Assembly: GCA_002269645.1 (NCBI GenBank) | Contig: NIVC01004352.1 | Location: 1 to 49,140, forward strand | Length of the DNA stretch: 49,140 nucleotides | Direction: 5' to 3' | DNA from: Macrostomum lignano | Taxonomy: Eukaryota | In this document: positions 5,440-47,120 of the stretch, piece by piece | Numbering within the stretch: the stretch's first letter is position 1 | Layout of the letters: each line of letters opens with the position of its first letter | Notes under the pieces: model-generated | Database searches by the model: none | Told to the model about the DNA's origin: nothing | The model's input: the letters and a program-made list of their open reading frames with translations, nothing else | Position numbers and translations under genes: made by a program

Positions 5440-5695
5440 AGCTACATGTACAGTATTGCGCGGCGCATCTGAAGGCTGCGTACGGCTGTTCAGTCCAAAG
5501 GACTGCAGGGGGCCGGTCGCCACATACTCCCTCAATTATATCAGCTAGTGCTGGCATCCATGTTACAGCTGGGTGAACTGAAGCAATGCAGAGTTTAATC
5601 GCCTTGCTCCAGGACACAAATTGTTCCGAGTTGGGTCGAGAATCGAACCCCCAACCTACAAGTCGTGAGTCCGACGCTCTAACTACTGAGCTCTA
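5440..5695 (-). mobile_element. tRNA-derived SINE, family A, copy 1
   Basis: Minus strand reads AGCTCAGTAGTTAGAGCG (A box) and GGTTCGATTC (B box), then a body shared with copies at 24856-26373 and 45276-45540 (AACTCTGCATTGCTTCAGTTCAC..GGACTGAACAGCCGTACGCAGCCTTCAGATGCGC). Confidence 0.85.
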
Positions 5696-7280: not shown

Positions 7281-8975
7281 TCACAGAACTGCGCAGCAAT
7301 GACAGCCGCTGTCGCTGCGCTTTGAGTTGCGGCGCTCTTCTGAAATAAAATTATTTAATTAATAGTTATAGATTAATTATCTTTATTTACTGATAACAGT
7401 TGACACAGCTAAGTCGACGTTATTGAGATCAAAGAATTTCGATGCAGAGTAAGTGCGCAATTTAACTTATTTAACTAGTGTGACTCAATCTGACACACTC
7501 AGCATTGTGATCAGACCCAGTCTGACACACTCAGCACTGCAATCAGACCCAGTCTGACACACTCAGCACTGCAATCAGACCCAGTCTGACACACTCAGCA
7601 CTGCAATCAGACCCAGTTTGACACACTCAGCACTGCAATCAGACCCAGTCTGACACACTCAGCACTGCAATCAGATCCAGTCTGACACACTCAGCACTGC
7701 AATCAGACGCAGTCTGACACACTCAGCACTGCAATCAGACGCAGTCTGACACACTCAGCACTGCAATCAGACCCAGCCTGACACACTCAGCACTGCAATC
7801 AGATCCAGTCTGACACACTCAGCACTGCAATCAGACGCAGTCTGACACACTCAGCACTGCAATCAGACCCAGCCTGACACACTCAGCACTGCAATCAGAC
7901 CCAGCCTGACACACTCAGCACTGCAAGCAGACTCAATCTGACACACTCAGCACTGCAATCAGACCCAGTCTGACACACTCAGCACTGCAATCAGACCCAG
8001 CCTGACACCCCAGAGCTCACCATCAGCAGGCTGGGGCGGAGCTGTCTCCCTGGAGACCAGGTGCATGACAGTGGTCTTGCCAAGCGGCAGGCGCAGGGCA
8101 GACAGGGTCACACTGGGATGAAGGAATCGGCCGTGATAGATGAGGCGAAGGATGTTGGAGTCTGGCCGCTCAGCCGACGACCAGTCTGGGGGGGGGTGGT
8201 TGAGCAACCTAGAGTGTTCACTGAAAAACATTTCTGATTATCTCTCGTATCTCAGATCTGTTTCTCCCATCTCAGATCTACCTCTCCCATCTCAGATCTA
8301 TCTCTCCCATCTCTGATCTATCTCTCCCATCTCTGATCTATCTCTCCCATATCTGATCTATCTCTCCCATCTCTGATCTATCTCTCCCATCTCTGATCTA
8401 TCTCTCCCATCTCTGATCTATCTCTCCCATCTCTGATCTATCTCTCCCATCTCTGATCTATCTCTCCCATCTCTGATCTATCTCTCCCATCTCTGATCTA
8501 TCTCTCCCATCTCTGATCTATCTCTCCCATCTCTGATCTATCTCTCCCATCTCTGATCTATCTCTCCCATCTCTGATCTATCTCTCCCATCTCTGATCTA
8601 TCTCTCCCATCTCTGATCTATCTCTCCCATCTCTGATCTATCTCTCCCATCTCTGATCTATCTCTCCCATCTCTGATCTGTTTCTCCCATCTCTGATCTA
8701 TCTCTCCCATCTCTGATCTATCTCTGATTTTTAATGATATCCTGTACGAGTATAATTTCCCTCTTGATGTATAATTAATAAAATATTGACATTCCCCAAA
8801 ATCACTCAGCTTAAATTCACCTACCTTCAGGCCAGTTGTGAAACACAAAATCAGTTATCTCTTGAGCACAGTCATCTGGATTAAATAGGAAATTATGAAC
8901 TTCTCCTGACACTAATAGGAGGCGAAGGTTAACCCGATCTGCTGGCACCAGGGGCATTGGCAATTCATTGTCCAT
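7281..8975 (-). CDS. UBL3: Ubiquitin-like protein 3 (membrane-anchored Ub-fold), 3 exons, 124 aa
   Basis: Exons 8825-8975, 8021-8185 and 7281-7339; GT-AG, phase 1/1. Translation MDNELPMPLVPADRVNLRLLLVSGEVHNFLFNPDD..HNWPE-DW..NILRLIYHGRFLHPSVTLSALRLPLGKTTVMHLVSRE..-EERRNSKRSDSGCHCCAVL*, with a C-terminal CAAX box. Confidence 0.95.
7485..8008. repeat. 32-bp tandem array (TCTGACACACTCAGCACTGCAATCAGACCCAG)n, about 16 copies, UBL3 intron 2
   Basis: Unit read directly; begins about 12 nt inside the donor at 8020. Confidence 0.96.
8250..8728. repeat. 20-bp tandem array (TCTCTCCCATCTCTGATCTA)n, about 24 copies, UBL3 intron 1
   Basis: Three identical units per 60-nt line from 8341 to 8660. Confidence 0.97.
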
Positions 8976-13519: not shown

Positions 13520-13939
13520 TCAGAAAACGTGGAGAACGTGACCTGCACCACTATGTTGTAATTGGGTATTGAGATTCGGGGTCTGAGCTTTTATGTGCAG
13601 GGCCTCGAGAATTCTAAGTTTGGCGTCAATATGGCTTTGGTCAATGATTTTAAAGTGTTCTTCTGGTTTGCAGTCATTGCAGTTAGTGCATTCAAGGAGG
13701 TGAGTTTGTATAGCAGATGGTTTGAGCCAGTGTTCCCTGATCCTCGTGTGTAGGTGTCTTTTGGTTTTCCCCACATAGGAGACGCTCTGGTCCACAGAGC
13801 AGTTAAATTGGTAGACAACATCTGCACGCAGAGTACAAGGAACACGCGACTTTAATCTGCTAACAAAGTTCCTAATCTTGTTCGTGTGGAAGACGACCCG
13901 GATGTTACGATTGAAAGAGGCAAAGAATAACCTACGCAT
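13520..13939 (-). CDS. C-terminal GIY-YIG endonuclease fragment of a Penelope-like element (RT domain absent)
   Basis: VVYQFNC..SYVGKTKRHLHTRIREH..HLLEC..HFKIID..LRILEALHIK..PNLNTQ carries the VY/YVG, R, H, E and N motifs of the PLE endonuclease. Confidence 0.88.
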   Translation of the reverse strand: MRRLFFASFNRNIRVVFHTNKIRNFVSRLKSRVPCTLRADVVYQFNCSVDQSVSYVGKTKRHLHTRIREHWLKPSAIQTHLLECTNCNDCKPEEHFKIIDQSHIDAKLRILEALHIKAQTPNLNTQLQHSGAGHVLHVF

Positions 13940-14109
13940 ATGGTTTAACTTTCAATCTCAATCTATAATTCTCTCTCCTACCTACTATACCTATGTATGT
14001 TGTTAAAGCCAAGTTGTAATCAATTGTTTTCAATCTTACCCTCCTTACCTGTGTACGTTGCAAAAACCAATATTTAATCAATCGCTTTCAATCTCAATTT
14101 CTCAAATCG

Positions 14110-17392: not shown

Positions 17393-20015
17393 TCAGAAGC
17401 TGAACCTCCTTGCGTGTCGCTGTCTCAAAGGCAGAGGCGGCGGCGGTGGTCGAGACGGCGCCAGCTTGCCGCCGCAGTTAGAAAGGTCGGAGAAGCAGCT
17501 AGCCTGGGGCTGAGCAGGGGCAGCGGCAGCCACTTCAGGCAGTGCAGGCGGATTGTTCTCCGAATTCTGACTAACCAACATCTGGTCGGCGCCGCCGTCT
17601 AGTCGATCAGTCTGACTGGCATTCTTAAACGACGAATCCGACTGTTCCTCGCTGCTAGCGGTTACCATGCCAACCAGGCCAGCCTGGGACTCGTTCGAAC
17701 TAGAAAACTCTTCCAATTGCTCGTCGCTAGCCCAAGCAATGTCGTCCACTTCGACAGATTCTTCTTCTGCAACTTCTCTCCGTTCGACATTGTCCTCTTC
17801 CTCCTCCGACATCATCGACGAAGCCGGTCGTTTCTGTCGAAAACTGCCGCCGCCACTGAACGGCGCCGCCGCCGGCATCGAAGCTCGACCGCGAGAGCGC
17901 GCGCCAAATGCGGCGGCGCCAAATGAAGAAGCGCCGGCGCCAAGCGCCCATCGAGGCACGGGGAAAAGTGTTTGACTTTGTTGCTGCGGCGGCGGCATTG
18001 GGAAGGGACTGTTGATGCCGACATTTCTAACCACAGATTCGACAACATCGGCGGCAGCAGCGTCAGCAGCGGCGTCCGCCGATTCAGCCACAGCGCCGGC
18101 GCCGGCAAAATACGGATGCCGGAGAGCCTCAGCGGCGGTGCAACGAGCCAACGGTGAGAAACGGAGCAGCCGTTCGCCAAGAAGGCTGGCCAGACTCCAT
18201 CGGCCGCCCGTGTAGCCGCAGCCGCCGTCAAGACCGCTGGCCAGACCAGTTGGCAGGCGGGCGGCTAAACAAGCGGCCACAGCCGAAGCCGGCAATTCTG
18301 GCGGAAACTCCGCGGCCAATGGTTGCCTAGCAACGGCAGATCCTGCTGGCCAAGCCGCGGCCGAGGGTACGCCTAGCAGGGCTAAGATTTGCCTAAGCAT
18401 GGGAGCCTCTTTCTGGGCATTGAATAGCGACTTGCCGTTGGCGGCCATTTCGAACAGAATGCAACCGGCGCTCCAGACGTCAGTAGGGCTGGAGTAGCCG
18501 TAGGCCAGCAGCACTTCCGGGCTGCGGTACCACAGAGTGCTGACCACTGCCGTCATCTGTGGGTTAGTAAGTTGATTCATTTGAGCGAGAGTTGATTCAA
18601 GAAATCAATGCATTAAGTTGATTGTTTAAATGTAAAACGACTTACCTGTTTCTCCCAGGAGCAAGCTCTGGCCATGTTGAAGTCGGCAATTTTGAGCACT
18701 GTGCACTGTTGATTTAGCAGACAATTCTGCGGCTTCAAATCACGATGAACGATTCGATGCCTGTGTAGAAAGTCCAGGCCGAGCATCAGCTGATGCCCAA
18801 GATTTCGAACAGCCGACTGAAATGAGTAATGCGACTGACTGCTCAAACTGGAGAGCTGGATGGAGACTGACACTGCTCAAGCTGGGGAACTTGATGGAGA
18901 CTGACACTGCTCAAACTGGAGAGCTGGATGGAGACTGACACTGCTCAAGCTGGGGAACTTGATGGAGACTGACACTGCTCAAACTGGGGAACTCGATGGA
19001 GACTGACACTGCTCAAGCTGGGGAACTTGATGAAGACTGACACTGCTCAAACTGGGGAACTTGATGGAGACTGACACTGCTCAAACTGGGGAACTTGATG
19101 GAGACTGACACTACTCAAGCTGGGGAACTTGATGGAGACTGACACTGCTCAAACTGGGGAACTCGATGGAGACTGACACTGCTCAAGCTGGGGAACTTGA
19201 TGGAGACTGACACTGCTCAAGCTGGGGAACTTGATGGAGGCTGACACTGCTCAAACTGGGGAACTTGATGGAGGCTGACACTGCTCAAACTGGGGAACTT
19301 GATGGAGACTGACACTGCTCAAACTGGGGAAGTTGATGGAGGCTGACACTGCTCAAACTGGGGAAGTTGATGGAGGCTGACACTGCTCAAACTGGGGAAC
19401 TTGATGGAGACTGACACTGCTCAAGCTGGGGAACTTGATGGAGACTGACACTGCTCAAACTGGGGAAGTTGATGGAGACTGACACTGCTCAAACTGGGGA
19501 ACTTGATGGACTGACAACTGCTTAAACTGGGGATCTTGAGGAAGAATTACTTTGGATTGACTAGGAGGATAGCTACTTAAAATACGAGTATAACTACACA
19601 AACAGGGAGCATTTCTACTCAAACAGGGAGTATGTCTACTCAAACAGGGAGCATGTCTACTCAAACAAGGAGCATGTCTACTCAAACTCACGGGTCCCAT
19701 TCGATGCCTGGACAAATAGATTTGCAAATCGCAGTGCAGCAGCTCGAACACTAGAAACAGATAATAGTCTTTGCCATGCTGCTGCAGTAACACGTCAATA
19801 AGTGCTACAATATTTTGATGACGCAATTTTGACAGCGGTTTCAATATGACCAATTCTCTCATAGTACTATAGGGCAGGCCGCTGCTATTGGACACGCGAA
19901 TCTGTTTTAGCGCAACTGGTCCATCTGGTCCGTGGCCAACTAAGACTTTGCTGTAGCTGCCTATGCCAATTTCTCGGCCAAGCACGTATCTGCAATATTG
20001 GTATGACATAAGCAT
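17393..20015 (-). CDS. CDK4/6: CDK4/6-like cyclin-dependent kinase, 3 exons, about 552 aa, long C-terminal extension
   Basis: Exons 19692-20015, 18646-18816 and 17393-18556; all GT-AG phase 0. Motifs EIGIGSYSKV, VALK, GLPYSTMRE (PISTVRE/PLSTIRE-like), HRDLKPQN, DFN, MTAVVSTLWYRSPE, DVWSAGC, HPYF. The start codon is tentative. Confidence 0.88.
18835..19530. repeat. 34-bp tandem array (CTCAAACTGGGGAACTTGATGGAGACTGACACTG)n, about 20 copies, CDK intron 1
   Basis: Unit read directly; ends about 18 nt from the acceptor at 18817. Confidence 0.96.
19598..19687. repeat. 21-bp tandem repeat (AAACAGGGAGCATGTCTACTC) x about 4, abutting the CDK intron 1 donor
   Basis: Gives the SRHAPCL repeats in the ORF track. 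Confidence 0.9.
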
Positions 20016-24019: not shown

Positions 24020-24450
24020 GAGTAGGGTAAGATTCTGACAGATGTGGGGTGAGATTCTGAGGGAAATGGGGTGAGATAATGAGAGACTTGGGGTGAGATT
24101 TTAAGAGAAGTGGGGTGAGATTATAAGGGAAATGGGGTGAGATTCCAAGAGAAGTAGGGTGAGATAATAAGGGAGTGGAGTGAGATTCTCAAAAAATGGG
24201 GAGGGATTCTGATAGATGTGGGATGAGATTCCAAGAGAAGTAGGGTGATATTCTAAGGGAAGTGGAGTGAGATTCTGATGGATGTAGGGTGAGATTCTGA
24301 GGGAACTGGGGTGAGATTATGAGAGAAGTGGGGTGAGAATATGAGGTAACTGGGGTGAGATTATGAGAGAAGTGGGGTGAGATTCTGAGGTAACTGGGGT
24401 GAGATTATGAGAAAAGTGGGGTGAGAATCTGAGGGAAGTGGGGTGAGATA
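24020..24450. repeat. Degenerate tandem array, about 22-bp unit (GGGGTGAGATTCTGAGGGAAGT-like), about 19 copies, 3' of the KDM3 stop codon
   Basis: Recurrent GGGGTGAGAT core at about 22-nt spacing. Confidence 0.88.
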
Positions 24451-24610: not shown

Positions 24611-27600
24611 TCACTCAAGGCTGGAAATGCAGAGGCGAACCCGCTGGAACAGGCTCATCTCCAGGCAGTCGTCGTGCGCTAGCACGCCCGTCCAATTGCT
24701 GGCCAGGCACTGCGCCATGGACTCTGCGCTGCTGAAATCCGTCTGAGCCTGGGTGCCCGTCATCTCGAAGCGGAACTGCGGGACAGAATGGGTTTGAAGA
24801 GGTGTGATATCGATTAGGATAAACTCAGTATCCTTAGAGAGGGGAGGGGGTTGTACTAGGCTAGAGAGTCGGACTCACGACTGAAAGGTCGGGGGTTCGA
24901 TTCACGACCCACTTCGAACAAGTCCATGAGCAAGACACTGAACTCTGCATTGCTTCAGTTCACCCAGCTGTAAAATGGGTGCCAGCATTAGCTGGGGTAA
25001 TTGAAGGTGTGTGTGGCGACCAGTGTTGGGCAAGTTACTCAAAAAAAGTAACTTGCGTTACTGTAACTTAAGTTACCACTTTTTAAAAAGTAACTTACGT
25101 TAGCCTAGTAACTTTGAACAAAAACCCGGTAACTTTTAAGTTACTTCCGTTACTTACTTCCGTTACCTATGTTATTAACAAAATTTTCTGCTTTTTTTAA
25201 CATTGCAAATGTGATGGAACAGCACAAATGATCGCGAAAGCCAGGAGGAAGAATACAACAACATTAATTTCAGTAACTGTATTAAATTTTAATCACTTTA
25301 GGCCCTTTCCGTAAAAAGAAGAGAAGCTGAAGGTCAGAAACGTTAAAGGCAAAACGCAATTTAATTTTTAATAACATTATAAGTTATAATACACAAGGAC
25401 AACTTAACGTAACTTCAGTTGTCCTTGATAATACATCGCTCGTAATAAGTATCTGGCTTTACTCCACTCTACAGTCTGCTTTACTAGTATTTTTATTTAT
25501 TTTCAATTATTATCATTAATATTAAATTATTGTGCAGTGCAGTGCAGTGCCAGTGGACTTTAGTGGTGTAGCCAGGGAGGCCGCCTTAACAATCGTTGGG
25601 GCGGCAACTTCACCCCACCTGCAAGACACCCCACCTGGGGGGGTGGGGTTGGGCGTGGCGGGTACCAAAAACCATGAGGCGATTTGAGTGCCTGCGGCGC
25701 TTAAATGAGTGCCTGCGGCGCTTAAATAAGTGCTTGCGGCGCTAAAATGAGTGCCTGCGGCGCTAAAAGTGGCAATAACATGAGGCATGGCCAGCCAGGC
25801 CAACCCGCCCCCCCCCCAATTAAAATTCCTGGCTACGTCGATCACTGAGTGGATTTGTGGAGACTACAGATGAATTTCTTTCTTTGGTTGTTTGTTTCTA
25901 AGAACTAAACAAAATATTTTTATTAACTTAAAAACAAAAAGCAAAAATATTTTACCGAAAATAACAAAGTAAAAACATGTTTCAAGTATTTCTTTATTAA
26001 TTACAGCGTAATACCGTATGATATTATTCACTTAGTTTTGAATTTAGGAATGAAAAATGCTAAAAATGTGACAACTGGCGTAATAGCTAAGCATATCAGT
26101 TTTAAATTTAAATATTGCGATTGTTGCAAAGTAACTGTAACGGACTTCCGAAATTTGAGTAACTTACCGTTACTCCGTTACCAAAATAGGAAAGTAACTT
26201 GCGTAAGGAACGCTTTACGAAAAAGTAACTTGCGTTACCATTTACAAGTTACTCGGTAACGGAAGTGCCCAACACTGGTGGCGACCCCCCCCGGCCCCCA
26301 GTCCTTGGACTGAACAGCCGTACGCAGCCTTCAGATGCGCGGCGCAATAGCTGCGGCTGTGCTATCGGTTGCACATCTGCCCAATCAATCAATATCCTTG
26401 AATATGCATCTCCGCTCCATCAGTATCCGCGAGTCTGCATCTGCTACCCCCAGTCACCCCAGCAAAAGAAACTACATGGACGAACCTGAAAGGCGCATCC
26501 CGCAGGCAGCAGCACCGCCTCGCCGCAGCGCTGGCGCAGCACAATTGGCGGCGGCTGCAGCGGAGCTACGCCAGCCAGTCGAGTCAGACTTAAGTCGTCC
26601 AGATATCTGAATAGTATGAAGGGGGGGGGGTTAACGGTGAGCAGAATGGCTCATAATAGGTCAAATTGGTGAATCAGATCCATGTCAAGTTACAGGTGTT
26701 AGGTCTCTAAATCAAGCTATGATCCAGTGTTAGGTCTCTAAATCAAGCTATGATCAAGTGTCAGGTCCCTAAATCAAGCTATGATCAAGTGTCAGGTCCC
26801 TAAATCAAGCTATGATCAAGTGTCAGGTCCCTAAATCAAGCTATGATCAAGTGTTAGGTCCCTAAATCAAGCTATGACAGGTGTCAGGTGTCAGGTCCCT
26901 AAATATCAAGCAATTAGAGGTGTCAGGTCCCTAAATCGGGCTATGACCGGTGTCAGGTTCCTAATTATCAAGCAATTAAAAGTTTCAGGTTCCTAAATAT
27001 CAAGCAATCACAGGTGTCAGGTCCCTAAATCGGGCTATGACAGGCGTCAGGTCCCTAAATCTAGCTATGACAGGCGTTAGGTCCCTAAATCTAGCTAAAT
27101 TATGACCGGTGTCAGGTTCCTAATTATCAAGCAATCACAGTTGTCAGGTCCCTAATTATCAAGCAATCACAGGTGTCAGGTTCCTAAATATCAAGCAATT
27201 GCAGGTGTCAGGTTCCTAAATATCAAGCAATCACAGGTGTCAGGTCCCTAAATCGGGCTATGACAGTTGTCAGGTTCCTAATTATCAAGCAATCACAGTT
27301 GTCAGGTCCCTAAATCTAGCTAAATTATGACCGGTGTCAGGTCCCTAAATATCAAGCAATCACAGGTGCAAGGTCCCTAAATCAAGCAATCACAGGTGTC
27401 AGGTCCCTGAATATCAAGCAATCACAAGTGTCAGGTCCCTAATTATCAAGCAAATAAAGGTGTCAGGTCCCTAAATATCAAGCAATCACAGGTGCCAGGT
27501 CCCTAAATCAAGCAATCACAGGTGCCAGGTCCCTAAATCAAGCAATCACAGGTGCCAGGTCCCTAAATCAAGCAATCACAGGTGCCAGGTCCCTAAATCA

Positions 27601-30600
27601 AGCAATCACAGGTGTCAGGTCCCTAAATGAAGCGAAGTCAGAGACGATAGGTCGTACCTGACAGTCTGCAGCTCCAACTGGTATATTTGTTCATTGAGCT
27701 GGCGCAGTGACTCGCTATGGAACACGTGCCACACAGCTGCAACTGGCTGGTCATCCGAGACGCTCGAGGCTGACGGAGGCAGCAGGGCCAGACTGACAAT
27801 GTCGCGGGAGGCGATGCGCAGATAGCAGTCGCTTCCGCGGTGCCCACTAACCAATCTGGAGGCTGTTTGAAACTTGCGCAAAGCCATGTTGAAGCAGCCA
27901 TGCGGACTGGGCAGATGTCGGTGGTGGTTGGCGGGTGGTAGCATGGGTACTTTGTTTATGAAGCCATTAATTTAGATGGGCCACTTATCTCTGCAAGGTT
28001 TTCTATCCACTCCCTTAGTAAAGGTACTAATACTGAAGCTACCAATTCATAAATCCGACGGGGTCAATCGGGGTCATAAAGCTACTGGGGTCAGTCAGGG
28101 TCATAAAGCTACTGGGGTCAGTCGGGGTCATAAAGCTACTGGGGTCAGTCGGGGTCATAAAGCTACTTAAGCAGTCGGTCATTAACCTACTGGACCCCTA
28201 GCAACCAACCTGATATAATCGGGCACCAGCTGTTTCAGCAGGGCTTCAGCGTCGCTCGGCGCTGGCCACTGTATCAGTCGCAGCCTGGCGGCTGTGCCGG
28301 CCTCCTCATTAGAGCTGTAGCACCAGAAAGTGGTCTCGGCTGTCTGGCCAGTAGGTGGAGTCACGGGCGCGCCGCTGATGCAGTCGATCAGAGCGGAGTT
28401 GAAACACTGGCGAGGCTGGCTGCTGGCGCTGCTGTTTGGGAGACACAGCGACTCCCCACTGCTGTTGGCGGTACATAGTGCCAGCAATATTATAGTTCAA
28501 GTTTAGTCGGCTAATTTCTAATCCCCTCTCCCTGTGCACTCCCTCTTCCCCTCTCCCTGTGCACTCTCTCTTGCCCTCTCTCCTTGTTCACCCCCTCTTC
28601 CCCTCTCTCCCTGTGCACCCCTCTTCCCCTCTCCCTGTGCACTCCCTCTTCCCCTCTCCCTGTGCACTCTCTCTTGCCCTCTCTCCTTGTTCACCCCCTC
28701 TTCCCCTCTCTCCCTGTGCACCCCTCTTCCCCTCTCCCTGTGCACTCCCTCTTCCCCTCTCCCTGTGCACTCCCTCTTCCCCTCTCCCTGTGCACTCTCT
28801 CTTGCCCTCTCTCCTTGTTCACCCCCTCTTCCCCTCTCTCCCTGTGCACCCCTCTTCCCCTCTCCCTGTGCACTCCCTCTTCCCCTCTCCCTGTGCACTC
28901 CCTCTTCCCCTCTCCCTGTGCACTCCCTCTTCCCCTCTCCCTGTGCACTCCCTCTTCCCCTCTCCCTGTGCACTCCCTCTTCCCCTCTCCCTGTGCACTC
29001 CCTCTTCCCCTCTCCCTGTGCACTCCCTCTTCCCCTCTCCCTGTGCACTCCCTCTTCCCCTCTCCCTGTGCACCCCTCTTCCCCTCTCCCTGTGCACTCC
29101 CTCTTCCCCTCTCCCTGTGCACTCCCTCTTCCCCTCTCCCTGTGCACTCCCTCTTCCCCTCTCCCTGTGCACTCCCTCTTCCCCTCTCCCTGTGCACTCC
29201 CTCTTCCCCTCTCCCTGTGCACTCCCTCTTCCCCTCTCCCTGTGCACTCCCTCTTCCCCTCTCCCTGTGCACTCCCTCTTCCCCTCTCCCTGTGCACTCC
29301 CTCTTCCCCTCTCCCTGTGCACCCCTCTTCCCCTCTCCCTGTGCACCCCTCTTCCCCTCTCTCCCTGTGCACCCCTCTTCTCCTCTCTCCCTCTGTGCAC
29401 CACCTCTTCCCCTCTCCCTGTGCACCCCCTCTTCCCCTCTCTCCCTGTGCACCCCTCTTCCCCTCTCTCCCTGAGCACCCCTCTTCTCTCTCCCTGAGCA
29501 CCCCTCTTCTCTCTCCCTGTGCACCCCTCTTCTCATCTCTCCCTCTGTGCACCACCTCTTCCCCTCTCCCTGTGCACTCCCTCTTCCCCTCTCCCTGTGC
29601 ACCCCTCTTCTCTCTCCCTGAGCACCCCTCTTCTCTCTCCCTGTGCACCCCTCTTCTCATCTCTCCCTCTGTGCACCACCTCTTCCCCTCTCCCTGTGCA
29701 CTCCCTCTTCCCCTCTCCCTGTGCACTCCCTCTTCCCCTCTCCCTGTGCACCCCTCTTCCCCTCTCCCTGACCCTGTGCACTCCCTCTTCCCCTCTCCCT
29801 GTGCACCCCCTCTTCCCCTCTCTCCCTGTGCACCCCTCTTCCCCTCTCTCCCTGTGCACCCCTCTTCTCCTCTCTCCCTCTGTGCACCACCTCTTCCCCT
29901 CTCCCTGTGCACTCCCTCTTCCCCTCTCCCTGTGCACTCCCTCTTCCCCTCTCCCTGTGCACTCCCTCTTCCCCTCTCCCTGAGCACTCCCTCTTCTTCG
30001 ATCTCCCTGTGCACTCCCTCTTCCTCTCTCCCTGTGCACTCCCTCTTGCCTTCTCCCTGTGCACTCCCTCTTCCCCTCTCCCTGTGCACTCCCTCTTCCC
30101 CTCTCCCTGTGCACTCTCTCTTCCCCTCTATCTGTGCACTCCCTCTTCCCCTCTCCCTGTGCACCCCCTCTTCCCCTCTCCCTGTGCACTCTCTCTTCCC
30201 CTCTATCTGTGCACTCCCTCTTCCCCTCTCCCTGTGCACCCCTCTTCCCCTCTCCCTGTGCACTCCCTCTTCCCCTCTCCCTGTGCACTCCCTCTTCCCC
30301 TCTCCCTGTGCACTCCCTCTTCCCCTCTCCCTGAGCACTCCCTCTTCTTCGATCTCCCTGTGCACTCCCTCTTCCTCTCTCCCTGTGCACTCCCTCTTGC
30401 CTTCTCCCTGTGCACTCCCTCTTCCCCTCTCCCTGTGCACTCCCTCTTCCCCTCTCCCTGTGCACTCTCTCTTCCCCTCTATCTGTGCACTCCCTCTTCC
30501 CCTCTCCCTGTGCACCCCCTCTTCCCCTCTCCCTGTGCACTCTCTCTTCCCCTCTATCTGTGCACTCCCTCTTCCCCTCTCCCTGTGCACCCCCTCTTCC

Positions 30601-33600
30601 CCTCTCCCTGTGCACTCCCTCTTCCCCTCTCCCTGTGCACTCTCTCTTCCCCTCTATCTGTGCACTCCCTCTTCCCCTCTCCCTGTGCACCCCCTCTTCC
30701 CCTCTCCCTGTGCACTCCCTCTTCCCCTGTCCCTTCAGGTGTATCTGCTCTTTATATATTTGTACCAGTTAATAAAGTACGAGATGTCCCTCTTTTACTT
30801 ACTCGGCACCGCTGTTCGCAGGCTTCAGGCATCCTGTTAGCACAATCGGCAGCCGCTTAATCCAACGAGTTTGAAAGTCGGCAAGCGAGGCTAAAGGCAC
30901 GGACAATCGCACAGCGCAATCCCCAGGCTTGCTGCTGTCAACATTGCCAGCTTCATCAGTGGCCCCCGGGTCGGAATGAGGATTTTTAGCCACCAGATCC
31001 TCTGCTAACTGATCGGCAGCTCGAGCCAGATTAGCCAGATAGTCCGGCCGCATAAGGCAAACTGGTTTCATGCGGTCTGGGCAGTGCCGCCAAGAGGGGC
31101 AGTCCTCGCTGAATTGCTGCTGCTGCTGAGGCTGCTGGTCGGGATAGTTAGCTAGGGAATTTGAGCACGTCAGACAGAGACTGTAGCCGCATTCTAGGCA
31201 GGCCAGGTGCATGCTAAATATTGGGCTGCCGCATCTGGTGCACTGCTCCTCAGGTGGGATTTGATTGACCGGCGGCTCCGGCTCCAGGCAGCGGGACCTG
31301 GATCATGGCGAATTCAAATAGGGATATTATCGATGTGATTTCAGATAGGGATATTATCGATGGGATTTCAGATTGGGATATTATCGATGGGATTTCAGAT
31401 AGGGATATTATCGATGGATTTCAGATAGGGATATTATCGATGGGATTTCAAATAGGGATATTATCGATGGGATTTCAGATAGGGATATTATCGATGGGAT
31501 TTCAGATAGGGATATTATCGATGGGATTTCAGATAGGAATATTATCGATGGGATTTCAGATAGGGATATTATCGATGGGATTTCAGATAGGGATATTATC
31601 GATGTGATTTCAGATAGGGATATTATCGATGGGATTTCAGATAGGGATATTATCGATGGGATTTCAGATAGGGATATTATCGATGGGATTTCAAATAGGG
31701 ATATTATCGATGGGATTTCAAATAGGGATATTATCTATGTGATTTTAGATAGGGATATTATCGATTGGATTTCAGATTGGGATTTTTGATGAGGATTCTT
31801 GATTGGGATGATTAAAGTGACATTTCAGCTTTTAGATTATGAAATGGGATTTGAATTATGAAACATTCAGCAATTTTTAGTTAATTTTCCATAAACAAAA
31901 TCACAGACTCACAAATCGGTCATCGGCTGCCGCCTCTGTTGTTTCTTTTTCCTACGCCAGAGCAGCTGGTTCAGGTCGCTGCCGGCCCAGCGAGCTACCG
32001 CGGCCGATTCTCGTTGAAGCAGCTGGTGCAGCGGCGGCAGAAGCAGCGTCAACTGCTTGGCAGCCACGTCTCGGTGCAACTTGTGCTGCGGCGATGAGGT
32101 TGCAGCGGCGGCGGTGGCTGCTGAGGATGTTGCCGTCGGCGGGGCCGGTTCGACTCGCCAGTCAGCCGTGTCAGCTGGTGTCACATCGCCTAGGGAGCAG
32201 AAACCCGCCACCGTGAGCACGCCTTGGCATAGGCGCAGCCTGGATAAGTTATAGTCATAATGTACTTTATAGGGATTCTGGATTCTTAATGAAGTCAGAT
32301 GGCGATTCTCAATGGGATCAATGGCGATTCTCAATGGGATCAGTGGCGATTCTCAATGGGATCAGTGGCGATTCTCAATGGGATGGGATCAGGGGCGATT
32401 CTCAATGGGATCAATGGCGATTCTCAATGGGATCAGTGGCGATTCTCAATGGGATCAGTGGCGATTCTCAATGGGATCAGGGGCGATTCTCAATGAGATC
32501 AGGGGCGATTCTCAATGGGATCAATCGCGATTCTGAATGGGATCAGTGGCGATTCTCAATGGGATCAGTGACGATTCTCAATGGGATCAATGGCGATTCT
32601 CAATGGGATCAGTGACGATTCTCAATGGGATCAATGGCGATTCTCAATGGGATCAATGGCGATTCTCAATGGGATCAGTGGCGATTCTCAATGGGATCAG
32701 TGGCGATTCTCAATGGGATCAGTGGCGATTCTCAATGGGATCAGTGGCGATTCTCAATGGGATGGGATCAGGGGCGATTCTCAATGGGATCAGTGGCGAT
32801 TCTCAATGGGATCAGTGGCGATTCTCAATGGGATCAATGGCGATTCTCAATGGGATCAATGGCGATTCTCAATGAGATCAATAGCGATTCTCAATGGGAT
32901 CAGTGGCGATTCTCAATGGGATCAGGGGCGATTCTCAATGAGATCAGGGGCGATTCTCAATGGGATCAATGGCGATTCTCAATGGGATCAGTGGCGATTC
33001 TCAATGGGATCAGTGACGATTCTCAATGGGATCAATGGCGATTCTCAATGGGATCAGTGACGATTCTCAATGGGATCAATGGCGATTCTCAATGGGATCA
33101 ATGGCGATTCTCAATGGGATCAGTGACGATTCTCAATGGGATCAGGGGCGATTCTCAATGAGATCAGGGGCGATTCTCAGTGGGATCAATGGCGATTCTC
33201 AATGGGATCAGGGGCGATTCTCAATGGGATCAGTGGCGATTCTCAATGGGATCAATGGCGATTCTCAATGGGATCAGGGGCGATTCTCAATGAGATCAGG
33301 GGCGATTCTCAATGGGATCAATGGCGATTCTCAATGGGATCAGTGGCGATTCTCAATGGGATCAGGGGCGATTCTCAATGGGATCAGTGGCGATTCTCAA
33401 TGGGATCAGTGGCGATTCTCAATGAGATCAGGGGCGATTCTCAATGGGATCAGTGGCGATTCTCAATGGGATCAGGGGCGATTCTCAATTGGGAAATTAA
33501 AAGATTCTCCAAGCACAAAAGTAGAGCTGCACTGCTTGGGTGCATTTAATCGAGCTCACTTTCTAAACTCCTTGAACCGGCAGCTGGGCTGGGCCACCGG

Positions 33601-36600
33601 AGGCGTGGCTATCAGCCGGCAGTCTCTACACAGGGGCAGCCGAGTGTAGACCAGCTCCCGGCAGGTGTTGCCCTGCAGAGCTACGAGAGTCTGGCTGGCA
33701 TCCGCCTGACCTTCTGTTGATCTGCTGCTCTCTGTTGGCAGGTGGGGACGGGCGAGAGGATTTTACATTTTACAGGTATACAATTGTGGTTTATTCATTT
33801 ATCCTATAGGGAGATTAAGATAAATATTTTTTATTATTGGGGTTTTTTAATTTTCTGGATTTTGTGGAGATTTTTTACCGTCAGCGCCGCTCATGGCAGT
33901 TGCAGTCGACAAGCTCAACCGTCTCTTAGCCGTGTTAGCAACCGATGCTAACGATAGCAGGGTCTCGCCATCCGACGCCCTCCCAGCTGATGCCTCTTTA
34001 GGCCTCGTTGCCGTCAGTGCTGAGGCCGCGGCGGCAGTCTTGGATGATCGTAACATTGTAGGTAGAGTGATCGACTGCCGCTTTCTGGATGCCTGCGTCG
34101 TGTTTGTGTTAATCATGCGATGCAGTCAATTATGTATAATAGACTGTTTACATCTGTTCAGTGACTTCATCAACATTCTCAAGTAGTCTGAGGATTTCAC
34201 CTATTCTGTTATTAGACGAAGCCTTTACCCATATCTGATATCCACATCTTAGGTGTGGGCGTTTGACACTTCAGCTACTCTGATAGCTGAGTCTTTATGC
34301 ACATACACATTCCCAGGTGGGCTAATGACACTTTTACAGCTACTCTAATAGCTGAGTCTTTATACACATTCCCAGGTGGGCTAATGACACTTTTACAGCT
34401 ACTCTAATAGCTGAGTCTTTATACACATTCCCAGGTGGGCTAATGACACTTTTACAGCTACTCTAATAGCTGAGTCTTTATACACATTCTCAGGTGGGCT
34501 AATGACACTTTTACAGCTACTCTAATAGCTGAGTCTTTATACACATTCCCAGGTGGGCTAATGACACTTTTACAGCTACTCTAATAGCTGAGTCTTTATA
34601 CACATTCCCAGGTGGGCTAATGACACTTTTACAGCTACTCTAATAGCTGAGTCTTTATACACATTCTCAGGTGGGCTAATGACACTTTTACAGCTACTCT
34701 AATAGCTGAGTCTTTATACACATTCTCAGGTGGGCTAATGACACTTTTACAGCTACTCTAATAGCTGAGTCTTTATACACATTCCCAGGTGGGCTAATGA
34801 CACTTTTACAGCTACTCTAATAGCTGAGTCTTTATACACATTCCCAGGTGGGCTAATGACACTTTTACAGCTACTCTAATAGCTGAGTCTTTATACACAT
34901 TCTCAGGTGGGCTAATGACACTTTTACAGCTACTCTAATAGCTGAGTCTTTATACACATTCTCAGGTGGGCTAATGACACTTTTACAGCTACTCTAATAG
35001 CTGAGTCTTTATACACATTCCCAGGTGGGCTAATGACACTTTTACAGCTACTCTAATAGCTGAGTCTTTATACACATTCCCAGGTGGGCTAATGACACTT
35101 TTACAGCTACTCTAATAGCTGAGTCTTTATACACATTCTCAGGTGGGCTAATGACACTTTTACAGCTACTCTAATAGCTGAGTCTTTATACACATTCCCA
35201 GGTGGGCTAATGACACTTTTACAGCTACTCTAATAGCTGAGTCTTTATACACATTCTCAGGTGGGCTAATGACACTTTTACAGCTACTCTAATAGCTGAG
35301 TCTTTATACACATTCTCAGGTGGGCTAATGACACTTTTACAGCTACTCTAATAGCTGAGTCTTTATACACATTCCCAGGTGGGCTAATGACACTTTTACA
35401 GCTACTCTAATAGCTGAGTCTTTATACACATTCCCAGGTGGGCTAATGACACTTTTACAGCTACTCTAATAGCTGAGTCTTTATACACATTCCCAGGTGG
35501 GCTAATGACACTTTTACAGCTACTCTAATAGCTGAGTCTTTATACACATTCCCAGGTGGGCTAATAAGACTTCAGCTACTCTAATAGCTGAGTCTTTATA
35601 CACATTCCCAGGTGGGCTAATGACACTTTTACAGCTACTCTAATAGCTGAGTCTTTATACACATTCCCAGGTGGGCTAATGACACTTTTACAGCTACTCT
35701 AATAGCTGAGTCTTTATACACATTCCCAGGTGGGCTAATAAGACTTCAGCTACTCTAATAGCTGAGTCTTTATACACATTCCCAGGTGGGCTAATAAGAC
35801 TTCAACTACTCCAATGGCCAAGTCTTTATCTACAAGAGCAGAGCGGAGAGCTTAGAAGAGACAAATATTGAGCGAGCCAGATTGCTATTGTAAAGTTTCA
35901 AAGGATCAGGGAGGCTTTGCTGGCCGCAGGTCATCTACCTGCCTATACTTTTTTGTGTAATTAAAGTGTTGAACGATTTTAGAGATTTTTAGGTATGCAG
36001 TAAGGTAGTATAAATTAATTAATTACTAACTCACCTTTGCTGTCGGCCTGGAGTTCCCAGCTGTCGCCGCCGCTGTACCTGAACTGTTCGATTCTGACTC
36101 ATCAATGTTAGCCTGCTTCTGTTTGGGCAAATTCCGCATAATAGGAGGCTGCATCGGTGGCGGCATTTGCTTTTTCTCCATCTGTTGCTCAGCCCACTTG
36201 TGCAACCAGGCCTTCTTGACAGCCATTGACGAACTGGCTTCGGTCGCTGCTGGCTCCGAATTACTTGGCTGCTTCTGCTGTCTTCCCGATGCTGGGGAGC
36301 TGCTGAGGACAGTGAATGAGGGGCAGATAAGGGGCGGATGAGGGTGGGGAGCTGCTGAGGACAGTGAATGAGGGGGCGGATAAGGGGCGGATGAGGGTGG
36401 GGAGCTGCTGAGGACAGTGAATGAGGGGGGCGGATAAGGGGCGGATGAGGGTGGGGAGCTGCTGAGGACAGTGAATGAGGGGGGCGGATAAGGGGCGGAT
36501 GAGGGTGGGGAGCTGCTGAGGACAGTGAATGAGGGGCAGATAAGGGGCGGATGAGGGTGGGGAGCTGCTGAGGACAGTGAATGAGGGGGCGGATAAGGGG

Positions 36601-38285
36601 CGGATGAGGGTGGGGAGCTGCTGAGGACAGTGAATGAGGGGGCGGATAAGGGGCGGATGAGGGTGGGGAGCTGCTGAGGACAGTGAATGAAGGGGCGGAT
36701 AAGGGGCGGATGAGGGTGGGGAGCTGCTGAGGACAGTGAATGGGGGGCGGATAAGGGGCGGATGAGGGTGGGGAGCTGCTGAGGACAGTGAATGAGGGGG
36801 GCGAATAAGGGGCGGATGAGGGTGGGGAGCTGCTGAGGACAGTGAATGAGGGGGACGGATAAGGGGCGGATGAGGGTGGGGAGCTGCTGAGGACAGTGAA
36901 TGAGGGGGGCGGATAAGGGGCGGATGAGGGTGGGGAGCTGCTGAGGACAGTGAATGAGGGGGACGGATAAGGGGCGGATGAGGGTGGGGAGCTGCTGAGG
37001 ACAGTGAATGAGGGGGCGGATAAGGGGCGGATGAGGGTGGGGAGCTGCTGAGGACAGTGACTGAGGGGCGGATGAGGGTGGGGAGCTGCTGAGGACAGTG
37101 ACTGAGGGGCGGATAAGGGGCGGATGAGGGTGGGGAGCTGCTGAGGACAGTGAATGGGGGCGGATAAGGGGCGGATGAGGGTGGGGAGCTGCTGAGGACA
37201 GTGAATGGGGGGCGGATAAGGGGCGGATGAGGGTGGGGAGCTGCTGAGGACAGTGAATAGGGGTGGATGAGGAGCGGATGAGGGGCGGATGAGGGGGAGC
37301 TGCTGATGACAGCGAATTGGGGGCGGATAAGGCCGAGGGGTGGATGTGGGTGGGGAGCTGCTGAGTACAGTGAAGTGAATGGAGGGGCAGATGAAGGTGG
37401 GGAGCTGCTGAGGACAGTGAATAAGGAAGTGGACAAAGACATTATTAAAAAAATGACAAAAGCAACACAGTTAAACTCACCATTGCGACAGCGAAGCTTT
37501 CTGAGCCGAGGAAGACAATCCTGTTGTCAAAGCGATATTAGTAACAGTGGCAACAGAGCTAGTAGTGCTGCTGCTGGCATTACACTTGCTAGCAATTCTA
37601 AGATCCAACGGTTCCACAGCTGTCATGGCGCTTATTGTTGCTCTACGATTACCGCCCGGTCTCAACTGGTCTTGATTCAGTCGCCTGGCCGCGCGCAGAG
37701 GCGGCTTGCCGCCAGCAGCCGATTTTGCTGAGGCCGACATTGGCAAACTGCTCCTGCCAGAGGGAGCGGCGAAACGACTCTGCTGGCCCAACTGCTGGGG
37801 AGGACAATGGCGATATTGATAATGGGCACAGCTGCCTGTTGCGTTTGCGGATAATAAACTGGCTGAGCGGGCGGGATCAGTACAGGCCGGATTGTAGGAC
37901 TGATGGCCGGGCTAACTGGATGATGCTGATTAATAATAGGCATTGGTATTGGCATTGGATAGTTATGGGAGTAATAATGCTGCCAATCGTGCCAATAGGA
38001 GTGCCATTTGTGCTGCAGAGATGGCCGAGGCGAAAATTGCGGCGGTTGAAGATGCGGCGGATAAAGCTGGTGCTGCTGCTGCGGATGTTGATTCGGATGG
38101 TGCACACAGTGCTGCTGAGGACGGTGAACTGCTATTGCTTGTTGTGTATGTGGACTAGCAGTAGCAGCGTGAGAGCTTGAAGTTGAGACTGGTTGTGGCT
38201 GCAAGGAGCGACGAGAATACGCGGTGAAAGCTGATCCACCGTGCGGCTGCGGCAGCATGTTAACGTTGTTATTATTGTTGTCCAT
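24611..38285 (-). CDS. KDM3: KDM3/JMJD1-family JmjC protein with C6 zinc finger; iron ligands lost
   Basis: Phase-consistent GT-AG exons 24611-24775, 26486-26606, 27658-27906, 28210-28461, 30803-31297, 31913-32239, 33560-33731, 33879-34092 and 36035-36302. The 5' exon 37481-38285 has a frame break. Family motifs LCRDCR..CRFKEFRK, GVLTVAGF, CTRCGSPIFSMHLACLECGYSLCLTC, FQTRWIKRLPIVLTG, QWP, PDYISPHGCFNMA, AVWHVF, YLD, GEAVLLPAG, TDFSSAE, HDDCL. Confidence 0.88.
25021..26277. mobile_element. Non-autonomous hAT-type DNA transposon (1257 bp including a nested insert)
   Basis: 12-bp perfect TIR CAGTGTTGGGCA. 8-bp TSD GTGGCGAC at 25013-25020 and 26278-26285. Dense subterminal GTAAC/GTTAC motifs at both ends. 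No transposase ORF. Confidence 0.92.
25561..25847. mobile_element. GC-rich MITE nested in the hAT element
   Basis: Ends TAGTGGTGTAGCCAGG / CCTGGCTACGTCGATCACTG; flanks AGTGGACT(T) and AGTGGATT(T) resemble a degraded TSD; internal 24-bp repeats. Confidence 0.6.
26690..27627. repeat. Composite 30-33-bp tandem array (core GGTGTCAGGTCCCTAAAT), KDM3 intron
   Basis: 31-bp GCTATGATCAA-type units at the left, 30-bp GCAATCACA-type units at the right, mixed in between. Confidence 0.93.
28059..28167. repeat. 27-bp tandem repeat (GGGGTCAGTCGGGGTCATAAAGCTACT) x4, KDM3 intron
   Basis: Unit read directly. Confidence 0.92.
28522..30735. repeat. 25-bp polypyrimidine tandem array (CCCTGTGCACTCCCTCTTCCCCTCT)n, about 85-90 copies, KDM3 intron
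   Basis: Unit read directly; it is the source of the 690-aa and 768-aa spurious ORFs. Confidence 0.97.
31312..31790. repeat. 27-bp tandem array (GATGGGATTTCAGATAGGGATATTATC)n, about 17 copies, KDM3 intron
   Basis: Unit read directly; ends about 14 nt from the acceptor at 31298. Confidence 0.96.
32298..33490. repeat. 22-bp tandem array (GATTCTCAATGGGATCA-[ATGGC/GTGGC/GGGGC/GTGAC])n, about 54 copies, KDM3 intron
   Basis: 17-nt constant block plus a 5-nt variable slot. Confidence 0.97.
34265..35815. repeat. 59-bp tandem array, about 26 copies, KDM3 intron
   Basis: Unit ACTTTTACAGCTACTCTAATAGCTGAGTCTTTATACACATTCYCAGGTGGGCTAATGAC, shifting 1 nt per 60-nt line. Edge units are diverged. Confidence 0.97.
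36292..37422. repeat. About 53-bp G-rich tandem array, about 22 copies, KDM3 first intron; the unit contains a 3' splice site on the gene strand
   Basis: GAGCTGCTGAGGACAGTGA was counted about 22 times; the minus strand reads CTCATTCACTGTCCTCAG|CAGCTCCCC. Confidence 0.95.

Positions 38286-43790: not shown

Positions 43791-47120
<3,330 letters not shown>

What the first reader, a model, noticed from the sequence alone, without database searches (positions are those of the whole stretch)
36292..37480. A tandem array of about 22 complete 3' splice sites in the first KDM3 intron
Seen: on the gene strand each unit of about 53 nt contains a branch-like CTCAT/TTCAC, a pyrimidine tract and CTCAG|CAG. 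The upstream donor (TG|GTGAGT at 37480) is phase 2 and joins in frame at the last unit's AG (36303). The first copy lies only 73 nt from the donor (AG at 37408), a normal short-intron size here. The array has no stop codon in that frame: using the first AG reads about 380 Pro/Ser/His-rich residues and stops at 36261, before the zinc finger and JmjC. Inference: amplification across an intron-exon boundary created a ladder of competing acceptors. It could give variable-length low-complexity inserts, truncated/NMD isoforms or recursive splicing, i.e. a VNTR-controlled splicing switch.
Basis: partly seen in the sequence, partly recalled or inferred. Interest (0 to 1): 0.82.

Follow-up and report, generated by a model that had tools for sequence, protein, structure and literature searches.

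The report
Minisatellite that copied a splice acceptor
A 1.1-kb minisatellite in a flatworm-type genome has copied the 3' end of an intron plus the first 10 bases of the next exon 22 times, but it looks like a tolerated by-product of an extremely repeat-rich genome, not a demonstrated splicing switch.

Summary
On the minus strand, 36293-37426 is a 21.5-copy array with a 52-54 nt unit. It holds 22 copies of ...TTCACTGTCCTCAG|CAGCTCCCCA. The first AG lies 73 nt from a consensus GTGAGT donor. The last AG (36303, with an in-frame NAGNAG partner at 36300) joins exon 1 in frame to exon 2.

- Thirty per cent of the window is minisatellite, in 25 arrays, and about a third of them look acceptor-like on the gene strand.
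- The genome resembles Macrostomum, where conserved genes splice past such arrays.
- Unit lengths and acceptor phases show no coding constraint.
- The array contains no AG|GT and no usable donor, so classical recursive splicing is excluded.
- Only the last AG is followed by purine-rich exon sequence.

The best reading is a non-adaptive minisatellite that spans the intron-exon boundary. The exon-adjacent AG would make the productive mRNA and the upstream copies would act as decoys. No transcript or ortholog data could be obtained, so which AG is used remains untested. The closest precedent is the human ABCA7 VNTR, which reiterates a splice donor.

The host gene is a very diverged KDM3/JMJD1-family member whose three predicted iron ligands are replaced. 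Interest is modest.

The parts
37481..37911 (-). 3' part of exon 1. It is the open frame ('frame B') that ends in ...SLSQ plus TG, in phase 2.
   Evidence: ORF list and translation. Read-through of the donor gives TGG TGA. The codon statistic weakly prefers this frame. No homolog was found.
37475..37480 (-). 5' splice site GTGAGT of the intron that holds the array.
   Evidence: Sequence. It is a perfect consensus hexamer placed exactly at the end of the ORF.
37427..37474 (-). Unique T-rich 5' part of the intron, with TTAAT about 38 nt before the first AG.
36293..37426 (-). Minisatellite with a 52-54 nt unit, 21.5 copies and 22 CTCAG|CAG sites.
37408..37409 (-). First acceptor AG. It gives a 73-nt intron, is out of frame, and leads to the stop at 36263-36261.
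36300..36305 (-). CAG|CAG of the last unit. It is a NAGNAG pair in which both AGs are in frame, and it is the proposed productive acceptor.
36408..36409 (-). Example of an upstream in-frame acceptor. The others have their G at 37089, 36621, 36516 and 36462.
36035..36302 (-). Exon 2 (268 nt), purine-rich at its 5' end. Its first 10 nt belong to the last repeat unit. Its first ATG is at 36226-36224.
36261..36263 (-). TAA reached from the 8 acceptors in the same phase as the first AG ((p-36303) mod 3 = 1), and from CCCCAG 36292.
36029..36034 (-). 5' splice site GTGAGT of exon 2, phase 0.
26447..33762 (-). Downstream exons of the host gene. They encode CRF..FR and Cys-rich zinc-finger motifs and a JmjC-like domain.

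Best explanation
This is a minisatellite that arose by tandem duplication of a segment spanning the intron-exon 2 boundary. That segment held the last ~20 nt of a formerly ~73-nt intron and the first 10 nt of the exon, together with C-rich 11-12 nt sub-repeats. It expanded to about 22 copies as part of the pervasive minisatellite activity of this macrostomid-like flatworm genome.

The inferred mechanism is as follows. The productive mRNA removes the whole 1178-nt interval and uses the exon-adjacent AG (36303, or its NAGNAG partner 36300). That site is singled out by exon definition. It is the only copy followed by purine-rich, GAR-containing exon sequence, and it lies 268 nt upstream of the next consensus donor. 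The 21 upstream copies are decoys embedded in C-rich sequence. They are used rarely or not at all, and most would give frameshifted, NMD-prone products. The array is tolerated, not selected for.

What is shown: the anatomy, the frames, the lack of coding constraint, the absence of recursive sites and the genomic context. What is inferred: which AG is used and why.
For: - Anatomy of the boundary duplication.
- Frames: AG 36303 and 36300 are in frame and the first AG is not.
- No coding constraint: 7 of 21 spacings are multiples of 3, and acceptor phases split 6/8/8. Unit differences sit in C-runs and at CpG sites.
- Exon context: downstream of the last AG the sequence is 60% purine with 3 GAR motifs. 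After every other AG it is 22-30% purine with none.
- Genomic context: 30% of the window is minisatellite, in 25 arrays, and arrays fill most introns of this gene to within 7-100 nt of the splice sites.
- Control 1: the ARL gene, whose Arf domain spans the intron (E = 3e-29), must skip 15.5 copies of a unit containing CCTCCCAG/GCTCAG. That array starts 18 nt after the donor.
- Control 2: in M. lignano UBL3, whose annotated protein maps at 100% identity, the mRNA skips 3.6 copies of the same repeat family about 60 nt upstream of the conserved acceptor.
- Array turnover: the orthologous UBL3 intron carries different arrays in the two species, so arrays turn over fast.
- Literature: with long flanking introns, the 3' splice site closest to the downstream donor across the exon is favoured (PMC9225289). 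In the human ABCA7 VNTR, which reiterates the exon 18 donor, the exon-adjacent site is canonical and the isoform that uses the next unit's site (retaining one VNTR unit) was about 2% of the quantified isoforms (PMC5954066).
Against: - No transcript, EST, annotated protein or ortholog covering the junction could be found.
- The first AG is a perfect copy only 73 nt from the donor. Short introns do exist here (90 nt). The intron-definition proximity rule then predicts use of the upstream site (PMC9225289).
- The codon-usage test for the exon 1 and exon 2 frames was weak.
- Exon 1 has an unexplained frame change.
- The host gene is highly diverged and lacks its catalytic ligands, so weak selection on this junction cannot be excluded.
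Confidence: 0.55

Rival explanations
1. The array is a functional ladder of competing acceptors, a copy-number-dependent splicing switch. It would yield variable Pro/Ser/His-rich inserts, or would tune productive against NMD isoforms.
For: All 22 units are complete 3' splice sites. Six are in frame, and no frame contains a stop. Human intronic VNTR length can shift splicing (PMC5954066; PMC10078293). UBC uses a tandem array of splice sites stochastically (PMC10809524).
Against: Unit length shows no phase constraint. The absence of stops is explained by composition. Acceptor-like arrays are common in this genome and are skipped in conserved genes. Arrays turn over between species. The recursive-splicing part is excluded.
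Confidence: 0.12
2. Intron definition wins. The donor pairs with the first AG (73-nt intron), so the array is exonic in transcripts that contain exon 1. These are truncated at 36261 or degraded. The JmjC-like protein is then made from transcripts that start elsewhere (first ATG of exon 2 at 36226-36224), or the gene is decaying.
For: The first AG has an intact core and a good upstream context at a typical short-intron distance. The proximity rule favours the upstream site for short introns. The array holds no ATG, so it would be harmless as a 5' leader. The gene is very diverged and has lost its iron ligands.
Against: Exon 1 joins exon 2 in frame only at the last unit (and at five others), as expected for a real coding junction. 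Downstream exons keep open frames over about 12 kb. No promoter or start-site evidence exists for an internal start.
Confidence: 0.15
3. The repeated acceptors serve spliced-leader trans-splicing. The leader could land on any unit AG and would change only the 5' UTR length.
For: About 39% of M. lignano genes are trans-spliced, and polycistronic precursors exist (PMC5730564). The array holds no ATG, and the first ATG after it is in the exon 2 frame. The lack of phase constraint fits this model.
Against: A perfect GTGAGT donor sits at the end of the upstream ORF, 73 nt from the first AG, which argues for cis-splicing. There is no polyadenylation signal between the ORF and the array. No trans-splicing data exist for this species.
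Confidence: 0.05
4. The gene model or the assembly is wrong. Copy number may be mis-assembled, or exon 1 may not belong to this gene, so the 'in-frame' junction is a one-in-three coincidence.
For: Exon 1 shows two overlapping frames with no convincing small intron between them. No homolog of exons 1-2 exists in the databases searched. The coding statistic is weak.
Against: The units carry distinct variants in an ordered pattern, as expected from a resolved array. A consensus donor lies exactly at the ORF end, and phase-0 AAG|GTGAGT closes exon 2.
Confidence: 0.08

Closest known systems
Human ABCA7 intron 18 VNTR (PMC5954066)
   Same: It is a C-rich minisatellite that directly abuts an exon and contains the canonical splice site, so every unit reiterates a splice signal. 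The exon-adjacent site is the canonical one. Use of the next unit's site gives a frameshifted minor isoform. VNTR length correlates with splicing of the neighbouring exon.
   Different: It reiterates the donor (GT) with a 25-bp unit on the 5' side of the intron. Here a complete 3' splice site (branch candidates, pyrimidine tract, AG and 10 nt of exon) is reiterated on the acceptor side. No expression or polymorphism data exist here.
Polyubiquitin UBC tandem array of dual-specific splice sites (PMC10809524)
   Same: It is a tandem repeat in which each unit carries a splice site, giving stochastic isoforms with variable unit number.
   Different: The UBC sites are AGGT, acting as both 5' and 3' sites, and they delimit the coding ubiquitin monomers. 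Here there is no AGGT, the units are not multiples of three, and they show no coding constraint.
NAGNAG tandem acceptors and alternative 3' splice-site competition (proximity rules, PMC9225289)
   Same: Each unit ends in CAGCAG, and both AGs of the last unit are in frame. The first-versus-last choice is the classical contest between intron definition and exon definition.
   Different: Classical cases involve two sites. Here there are 22 near-identical sites spread over 1.1 kb.
Recursive splice sites (AG|GT ratchet points)
   Same: Both involve internal 3' splice sites within a long intron.
   Different: A defining feature is absent. No GT follows any unit AG, and the array has no donor-like sequence.
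Intronic minisatellites linked to splicing (C. elegans CeRep25B, PMC4039745; human spl-TRs, PMC10078293)
   Same: They are intronic tandem repeats near splice sites that are associated with splicing variation.
   Different: Those act through regulatory motifs. They do not duplicate the splice site itself.
G-quadruplex-forming minisatellites (human CEB1/CEB25 type; from my own knowledge)
   Same: Fifteen canonical G4 motifs lie on the G-rich (+, template) strand of the array. This could explain its instability and expansion.
   Different: G4 formation and instability were not tested here.

Membership tests
Minisatellite / VNTR | Head-to-tail copies of a 10-100 bp unit. | tested here: met
   Period 54, 21.5 copies, 89% matches. 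Units aligned in register.
Minisatellite / VNTR | Copy number varies among individuals. | not testable with these tools
   Only one assembly is available. The unit was not found in metagenome contigs.
Splice-site-reiterating boundary VNTR (ABCA7 type) | The array abuts the exon and includes the splice site in use. | tested here: met
   The in-frame AG 36303/36300 lies in the last unit, and 10 nt of that unit are exonic. This depends on the exon 1-exon 2 model.
Splice-site-reiterating boundary VNTR (ABCA7 type) | Repeat length changes isoform ratios. | not testable with these tools
   No transcript or population data.
Recursive splice sites | Juxtaposed 3' and 5' splice sites (AG|GT) that regenerate a donor after the first splice. 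| tested here: not met
   The array has 0 AGGT, and GT occurs only in poor contexts such as TGTCC, CGTCC and AGTCA.
Dual-specific splice-site tandem arrays (UBC type) | AGGT in each unit, with coding units in frame. | tested here: not met
   No AGGT. Only 7 of 21 spacings are divisible by 3.
NAGNAG tandem acceptor | Two AGs 3 nt apart at the acceptor. | tested here: met
   CAG|CAG at 36305-36300, with both AGs in frame. Usage of both is not testable.
KDM3 / JMJD1 (JMJ25) family (host gene) | JmjC domain preceded by a Cys-rich zinc finger. | tested here: inconclusive
   Pfam JmjC scores only E = 0.14 and no solved structure matches. An exhaustive HMMER search gave 18 hits with a best E-value of 2e-8. 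All ten hits scanned against Pfam match JmjC, although P0006 falls below Pfam's gathering score. Several of the eight looked up are named KDM3, JMJ25 or JmjC-domain proteins, and their alignments cover the zinc finger and the JmjC domain.
KDM3 / JMJD1 (JMJ25) family (host gene) | Fe(II)-binding HxD...H triad. | tested here: not met
   In the alignment, LHxD of relatives faces LRIA, and AHQV faces AFQV. The protein is predicted to be catalytically inactive. This depends on my exon joins.
Spliced-leader trans-splice acceptor | A leader sequence joined at the AG in mRNA. | not testable with these tools
   No RNA data. Trans-splicing is frequent in M. lignano.

The most novel reading that the evidence does not exclude
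The array works as a copy-number-dependent rheostat. The first AG (intron definition, 73 nt from the donor) and the last AG (exon definition, next to purine-rich exon 2) compete. The number of intervening decoys sets the fraction of productive versus frameshifted, NMD-targeted mRNA of a JmjC-like chromatin protein. Minisatellite length variation would then change gene dosage heritably.
Probability: 0.1. Interest if true: 0.65.

Novelty: new variant of a known kind. Interest (0 to 1): 0.3.

Why it matters
If the upstream copies are ignored, the locus is a natural 22-fold competition experiment. It would show that sequence identity of a complete 3' splice site is not enough for use, and that exon context and position decide. 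If they are used, it would be an acceptor-side counterpart of the ABCA7 VNTR and a route by which minisatellite instability changes gene output. In both cases it illustrates how a genome with 15-30% tandem repeats keeps splicing accurate. The wider point may matter more than this one array: introns in this lineage are filled almost end to end with fast-turning-over minisatellites, some of which belong to dispersed families shared between species.

Tried and rejected
- A protein search with the exon 1-exon 2 junction peptide found nothing.
- A search with concatenated zinc-finger and JmjC exons found nothing, but the 8000-candidate list was probably swamped by polyQ words.
- Pfam scans of single exons found nothing.
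- The PDB sequence search found nothing relevant.
- Rfam and tRNA scans of the window found nothing.
- An exact look-up of the exon 1 ORF in public assemblies found it not on record.
- The repeat core is absent from the M. lignano locus L001 and from metagenome contigs.
- A codon-usage frame test, trained on 2.75 kb of homology-supported exons, was too weak to decide.
- A search for a small GT-AG intron joining the two exon 1 frames found no convincing donor.
- CCCCAG 36292 and GACAG 36278 were rejected as acceptors because both are out of frame and lack a pyrimidine tract.
- The idea that the absence of stops indicates coding was rejected, because composition explains it.
- Recursive splicing was rejected.
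- An operon or trans-splicing reading was considered and ranked low, because a consensus donor lies at the end of the upstream ORF.


Full report
**Observation.** On the minus strand, the interval 36293-37426 is a tandem array with period 54, 21.5 copies, 89% matches and TRF score 1738. It contains 22 CTCAG|CAG sites whose AG ends run from 37408 to 36303. Spacings range from 41 to 59 nt and are mostly 52-54 nt. The 24-nt core TTCACTGTCCTCAGCAGCTCCCCA occurs 22 times, 17 of them exact, and nowhere else in the window. Shuffled sequence gives none.

Upstream, the ORF 37911-37481 ends ...TCG CAA TG|GTGAGT, which is a phase-2 consensus donor. Read-through gives TGG TGA. The first AG closes a 73-nt intron. 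Exon 2 is 36302-36035 (268 nt). Its only protein-like frame (SGRQQKQPSNSEP...NSRPTAK) ends in phase 0 at AAG|GTGAGT.

AG 36303 and its NAGNAG partner 36300 join exon 1 to that frame. CCCCAG at 36292 does not. From the first AG the reading runs about 381 codons to TAA 36263-36261.

**Is it more than chance?** The array itself is real. The 22 'complete acceptors', however, are copies of one sequence and count as one observation. The array has no stop triplet in any frame. With 54% C, 23% T, 14% A and 10% G, a 53-nt unit lacks stops about half the time, so this is not a signal.

A simple acceptor heuristic required YAG, at least 80% pyrimidine upstream, no nearby upstream AG, and a yUnAy motif 15-42 nt upstream. 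It passes 28 sites on the minus strand, and 19 of them are in this array. Acceptor-likeness as such is common among the repeats here. Twenty-five arrays cover 30% of the window, and 8 of them have a YAG preceded by at least 70% pyrimidine on the gene strand. One array (24021-24449) scores higher than this one.

**Origin of the array.** Aligning the units with both flanks shows the following:
- Each unit begins with the first 10 nt of exon 2 (CAGCTCCCCA).
- Each unit ends with the last 16-19 nt of the unique 73-nt intron (..ATTCACTGTCCTCAG).
- The middle consists of 11-12 nt sub-repeats (CCCTCATCCGCC / CCTTATCCGCC / CCCTCATTCAC) that resemble the intron tail.

The 5' units are diverged (47, 58 and 59 nt). 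The 3' units are nearly identical and show multi-unit patterns. The variant string is ABCDEFGHIJIKDLHHMJJHM, and the last two four-unit blocks match at 210 of 213 aligned positions. So duplication across the boundary is supported, with recent growth next to the exon. Unit differences are C-run lengths and CpG-to-TpG changes, which are mutational hot spots. The conserved core is therefore not evidence of selection.

**Context.** The UBL3 exons of the window are 72% identical to Macrostomum lignano UBL3, and the next-best hits are 56-57% identical. The M. lignano locus L001 is equally packed with 18-44 nt minisatellites. One 28-nt family there is about 90% identical to the window's array at 2564-2996, but it sits in a different gene. 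The window is thus from a macrostomid-like flatworm, though not M. lignano itself.

For M. lignano, Wudarski et al. report that simple and tandem repeats make up 15% of the genome. They also report mean intron lengths of 1.1-1.4 kb and that 39% of genes are trans-spliced (PMC5730564). In the host gene nearly every intron holds an array, which reaches to within 7-100 nt of the splice sites. The studied array differs only in that its unit carries the 3' splice signals, so it can extend right to the exon.

**Controls for 'decoys are skipped'.**
- The ARL gene's Arf domain (Pfam E = 3e-29) spans an intron of about 1.6 kb. That intron starts GTAAGT and, 18 nt later, holds 15.5 copies of CCTCCCAGATGCTCAGTTGCTGGGCCAG. 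The productive mRNA must bypass them to reach CCTCAG|CTGATGGAG.
- In M. lignano UBL3 the annotated protein maps at 100% identity. Its conserved junction NWPE|DWSE uses CTGCAG|ATTGG. It does not use the 3.6 copies of CTCCCAGATCCTCAG about 60 nt upstream.
- The orthologous UBL3 intron carries unrelated arrays in the two species, which indicates fast turnover.

**Which AG is used?** No direct evidence could be obtained. No protein or contig in the public collections covers exons 1-2. No close ortholog of the gene exists among 1.84 billion representatives. The indirect arguments are these:
1. Spacings divisible by 3 number 7 of 21, and acceptor phases split 6/8/8. The array therefore evolves as non-coding sequence.
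2. Only the last AG is followed by purine-rich sequence: 60% purine and three GAR motifs in 60 nt, against 22-30% and none for the others. It also lies 268 nt from the next consensus donor, which is a typical exon-definition unit.
3. Literature supports both outcomes. Short introns favour the upstream 3' site. Long flanking introns favour the site closest to the downstream donor across the exon (PMC9225289). I therefore predict either a single product or a bimodal one (first and last AG), and not an even ladder.
4. In the human ABCA7 VNTR, which reiterates the exon 18 donor, the exon-adjacent site is canonical. The isoform that uses the next unit's site, and so retains one VNTR unit, was about 2% of the quantified isoforms (PMC5954066).

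Against last-AG use, the first AG is a perfect copy at a normal short-intron distance. A 90-nt CDK intron exists in the window.

**Points of the interpretation that fail.** Classical recursive splicing needs AG|GT. The array has no AGGT, and its only GT contexts are poor donor matches. A coding 'insert' function has no support from phase statistics. A VNTR switch is possible but untested.

**Host gene.** Pfam gives JmjC only at E = 0.14, and the PDB search gives nothing. An exhaustive HMMER search gives 18 hits, with a best E-value of 2e-8 at 29% identity. All ten hits scanned against Pfam match JmjC, although one (P0006) falls below Pfam's gathering score. Several of the eight looked up are named KDM3, JMJ25 or JmjC-domain proteins of fungi and plants, and the rest are unnamed or hypothetical. 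The alignments span the CxxC...HxxCxxCG finger and the JmjC domain. The three iron ligands appear replaced (LHxD to LRIA, AHQV to AFQV). 'KDM3' is acceptable at family level only, and the protein is probably not an active demethylase. 'First intron' is uncertain, because exon 1 consists of two overlapping frames with no convincing small intron between them.

**Verdict.** The best explanation (confidence 0.55) is a non-adaptive, boundary-spanning minisatellite whose exon-adjacent AG is the productive acceptor. The rivals are:
- first-AG use with an alternative start or a decaying gene (0.15);
- a functional ladder or switch (0.12);
- a gene-model or assembly problem (0.08);
- a trans-splice landing pad (0.05).

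The closest precedent is the ABCA7 donor-reiterating VNTR, and this is the acceptor-side variant. Interest is 0.3.

Noticed in passing
whole window; L001 1-23252: Thirty per cent of the window (14.7 kb) lies in 25 minisatellite arrays. The M. lignano UBL3 locus shows the same architecture. UBL3 is 72% identical to M. lignano, so the window is probably from a macrostomid-like flatworm that is not M. lignano.
   Followed up: partly
window 2564-2996; L001 10358-10459: A 28-nt minisatellite family is about 90% identical between the two species but sits in different genes (an ARL intron here, UBL3 intron 1 in M. lignano). This suggests dispersed, possibly mobile, minisatellite families.
   Followed up: partly
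window 8208-8822 vs L001 10229-10521: The orthologous UBL3 intron 1 carries unrelated arrays in the two species (20-nt x 25 copies here, 28-nt x 3.6 copies there). Intronic arrays therefore turn over rapidly.
   Followed up: partly
window 27660-27950 and 26447-26600 (minus): The JmjC-like domain of the host gene appears to lack all three Fe(II) ligands (HxD to RxA, H to F). It is possibly a catalytically dead KDM3-family paralog.
   Followed up: partly
window 37680-37911 (minus): Exon 1 consists of two overlapping open frames: one starting at an ATG near 38285 and ending at 37680, the other covering 37911-37481. No consensus small intron links them. An acceptor-like TTGTCCTCCCCAG|CAG at 37795 resembles the repeat core. 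The cause could be an assembly indel, an atypical 89-nt intron, or two separate ORFs.
   Followed up: partly
window 36293-37426 (+ strand); 28522-30734 (- strand): Fifteen canonical G-quadruplex motifs and 32 GGGGCGG boxes lie on the G-rich (+) strand of the studied array. Seventeen G4 motifs lie on the gene strand of the 25-nt x 88 array in a downstream intron.
   Followed up: no
window 18556-18645 (minus): A 90-nt intron in a CDK-like gene has a perfect TACTAAC box, with the branch A only 8 nt from the AG and almost no pyrimidine tract. This hints at short branch-to-AG distances in this species.
   Followed up: no
window 13523-13951 (minus): A 143-aa ORF looked to me like a GIY-YIG motif (VYQFNC...YVGKT..L..R..EH), which would fit a Penelope-like retroelement fragment. 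This was recognised by eye and not confirmed by any search.
   Followed up: no
window 5454-5682, 45289-45512, 24862-25021, 26291-26349: Four copies of a dispersed element of about 230 nt, which looked to me tRNA-related or SINE-like, share 83-92% identity. Two of them lie inside the host gene region.
   Followed up: partly
window 44298-44684: An (AGAC)n tract of about 98 copies, open in several frames, lies between exons that looked PDZ-like by eye.
   Followed up: no
window 24021-24449 (minus): A second acceptor-like array lies in the 3' part of the same gene: a 22-nt unit ...CCCACTTCTCTCAG|A in 19.5 copies. Its pyrimidine score is higher than that of the studied array.
   Followed up: no
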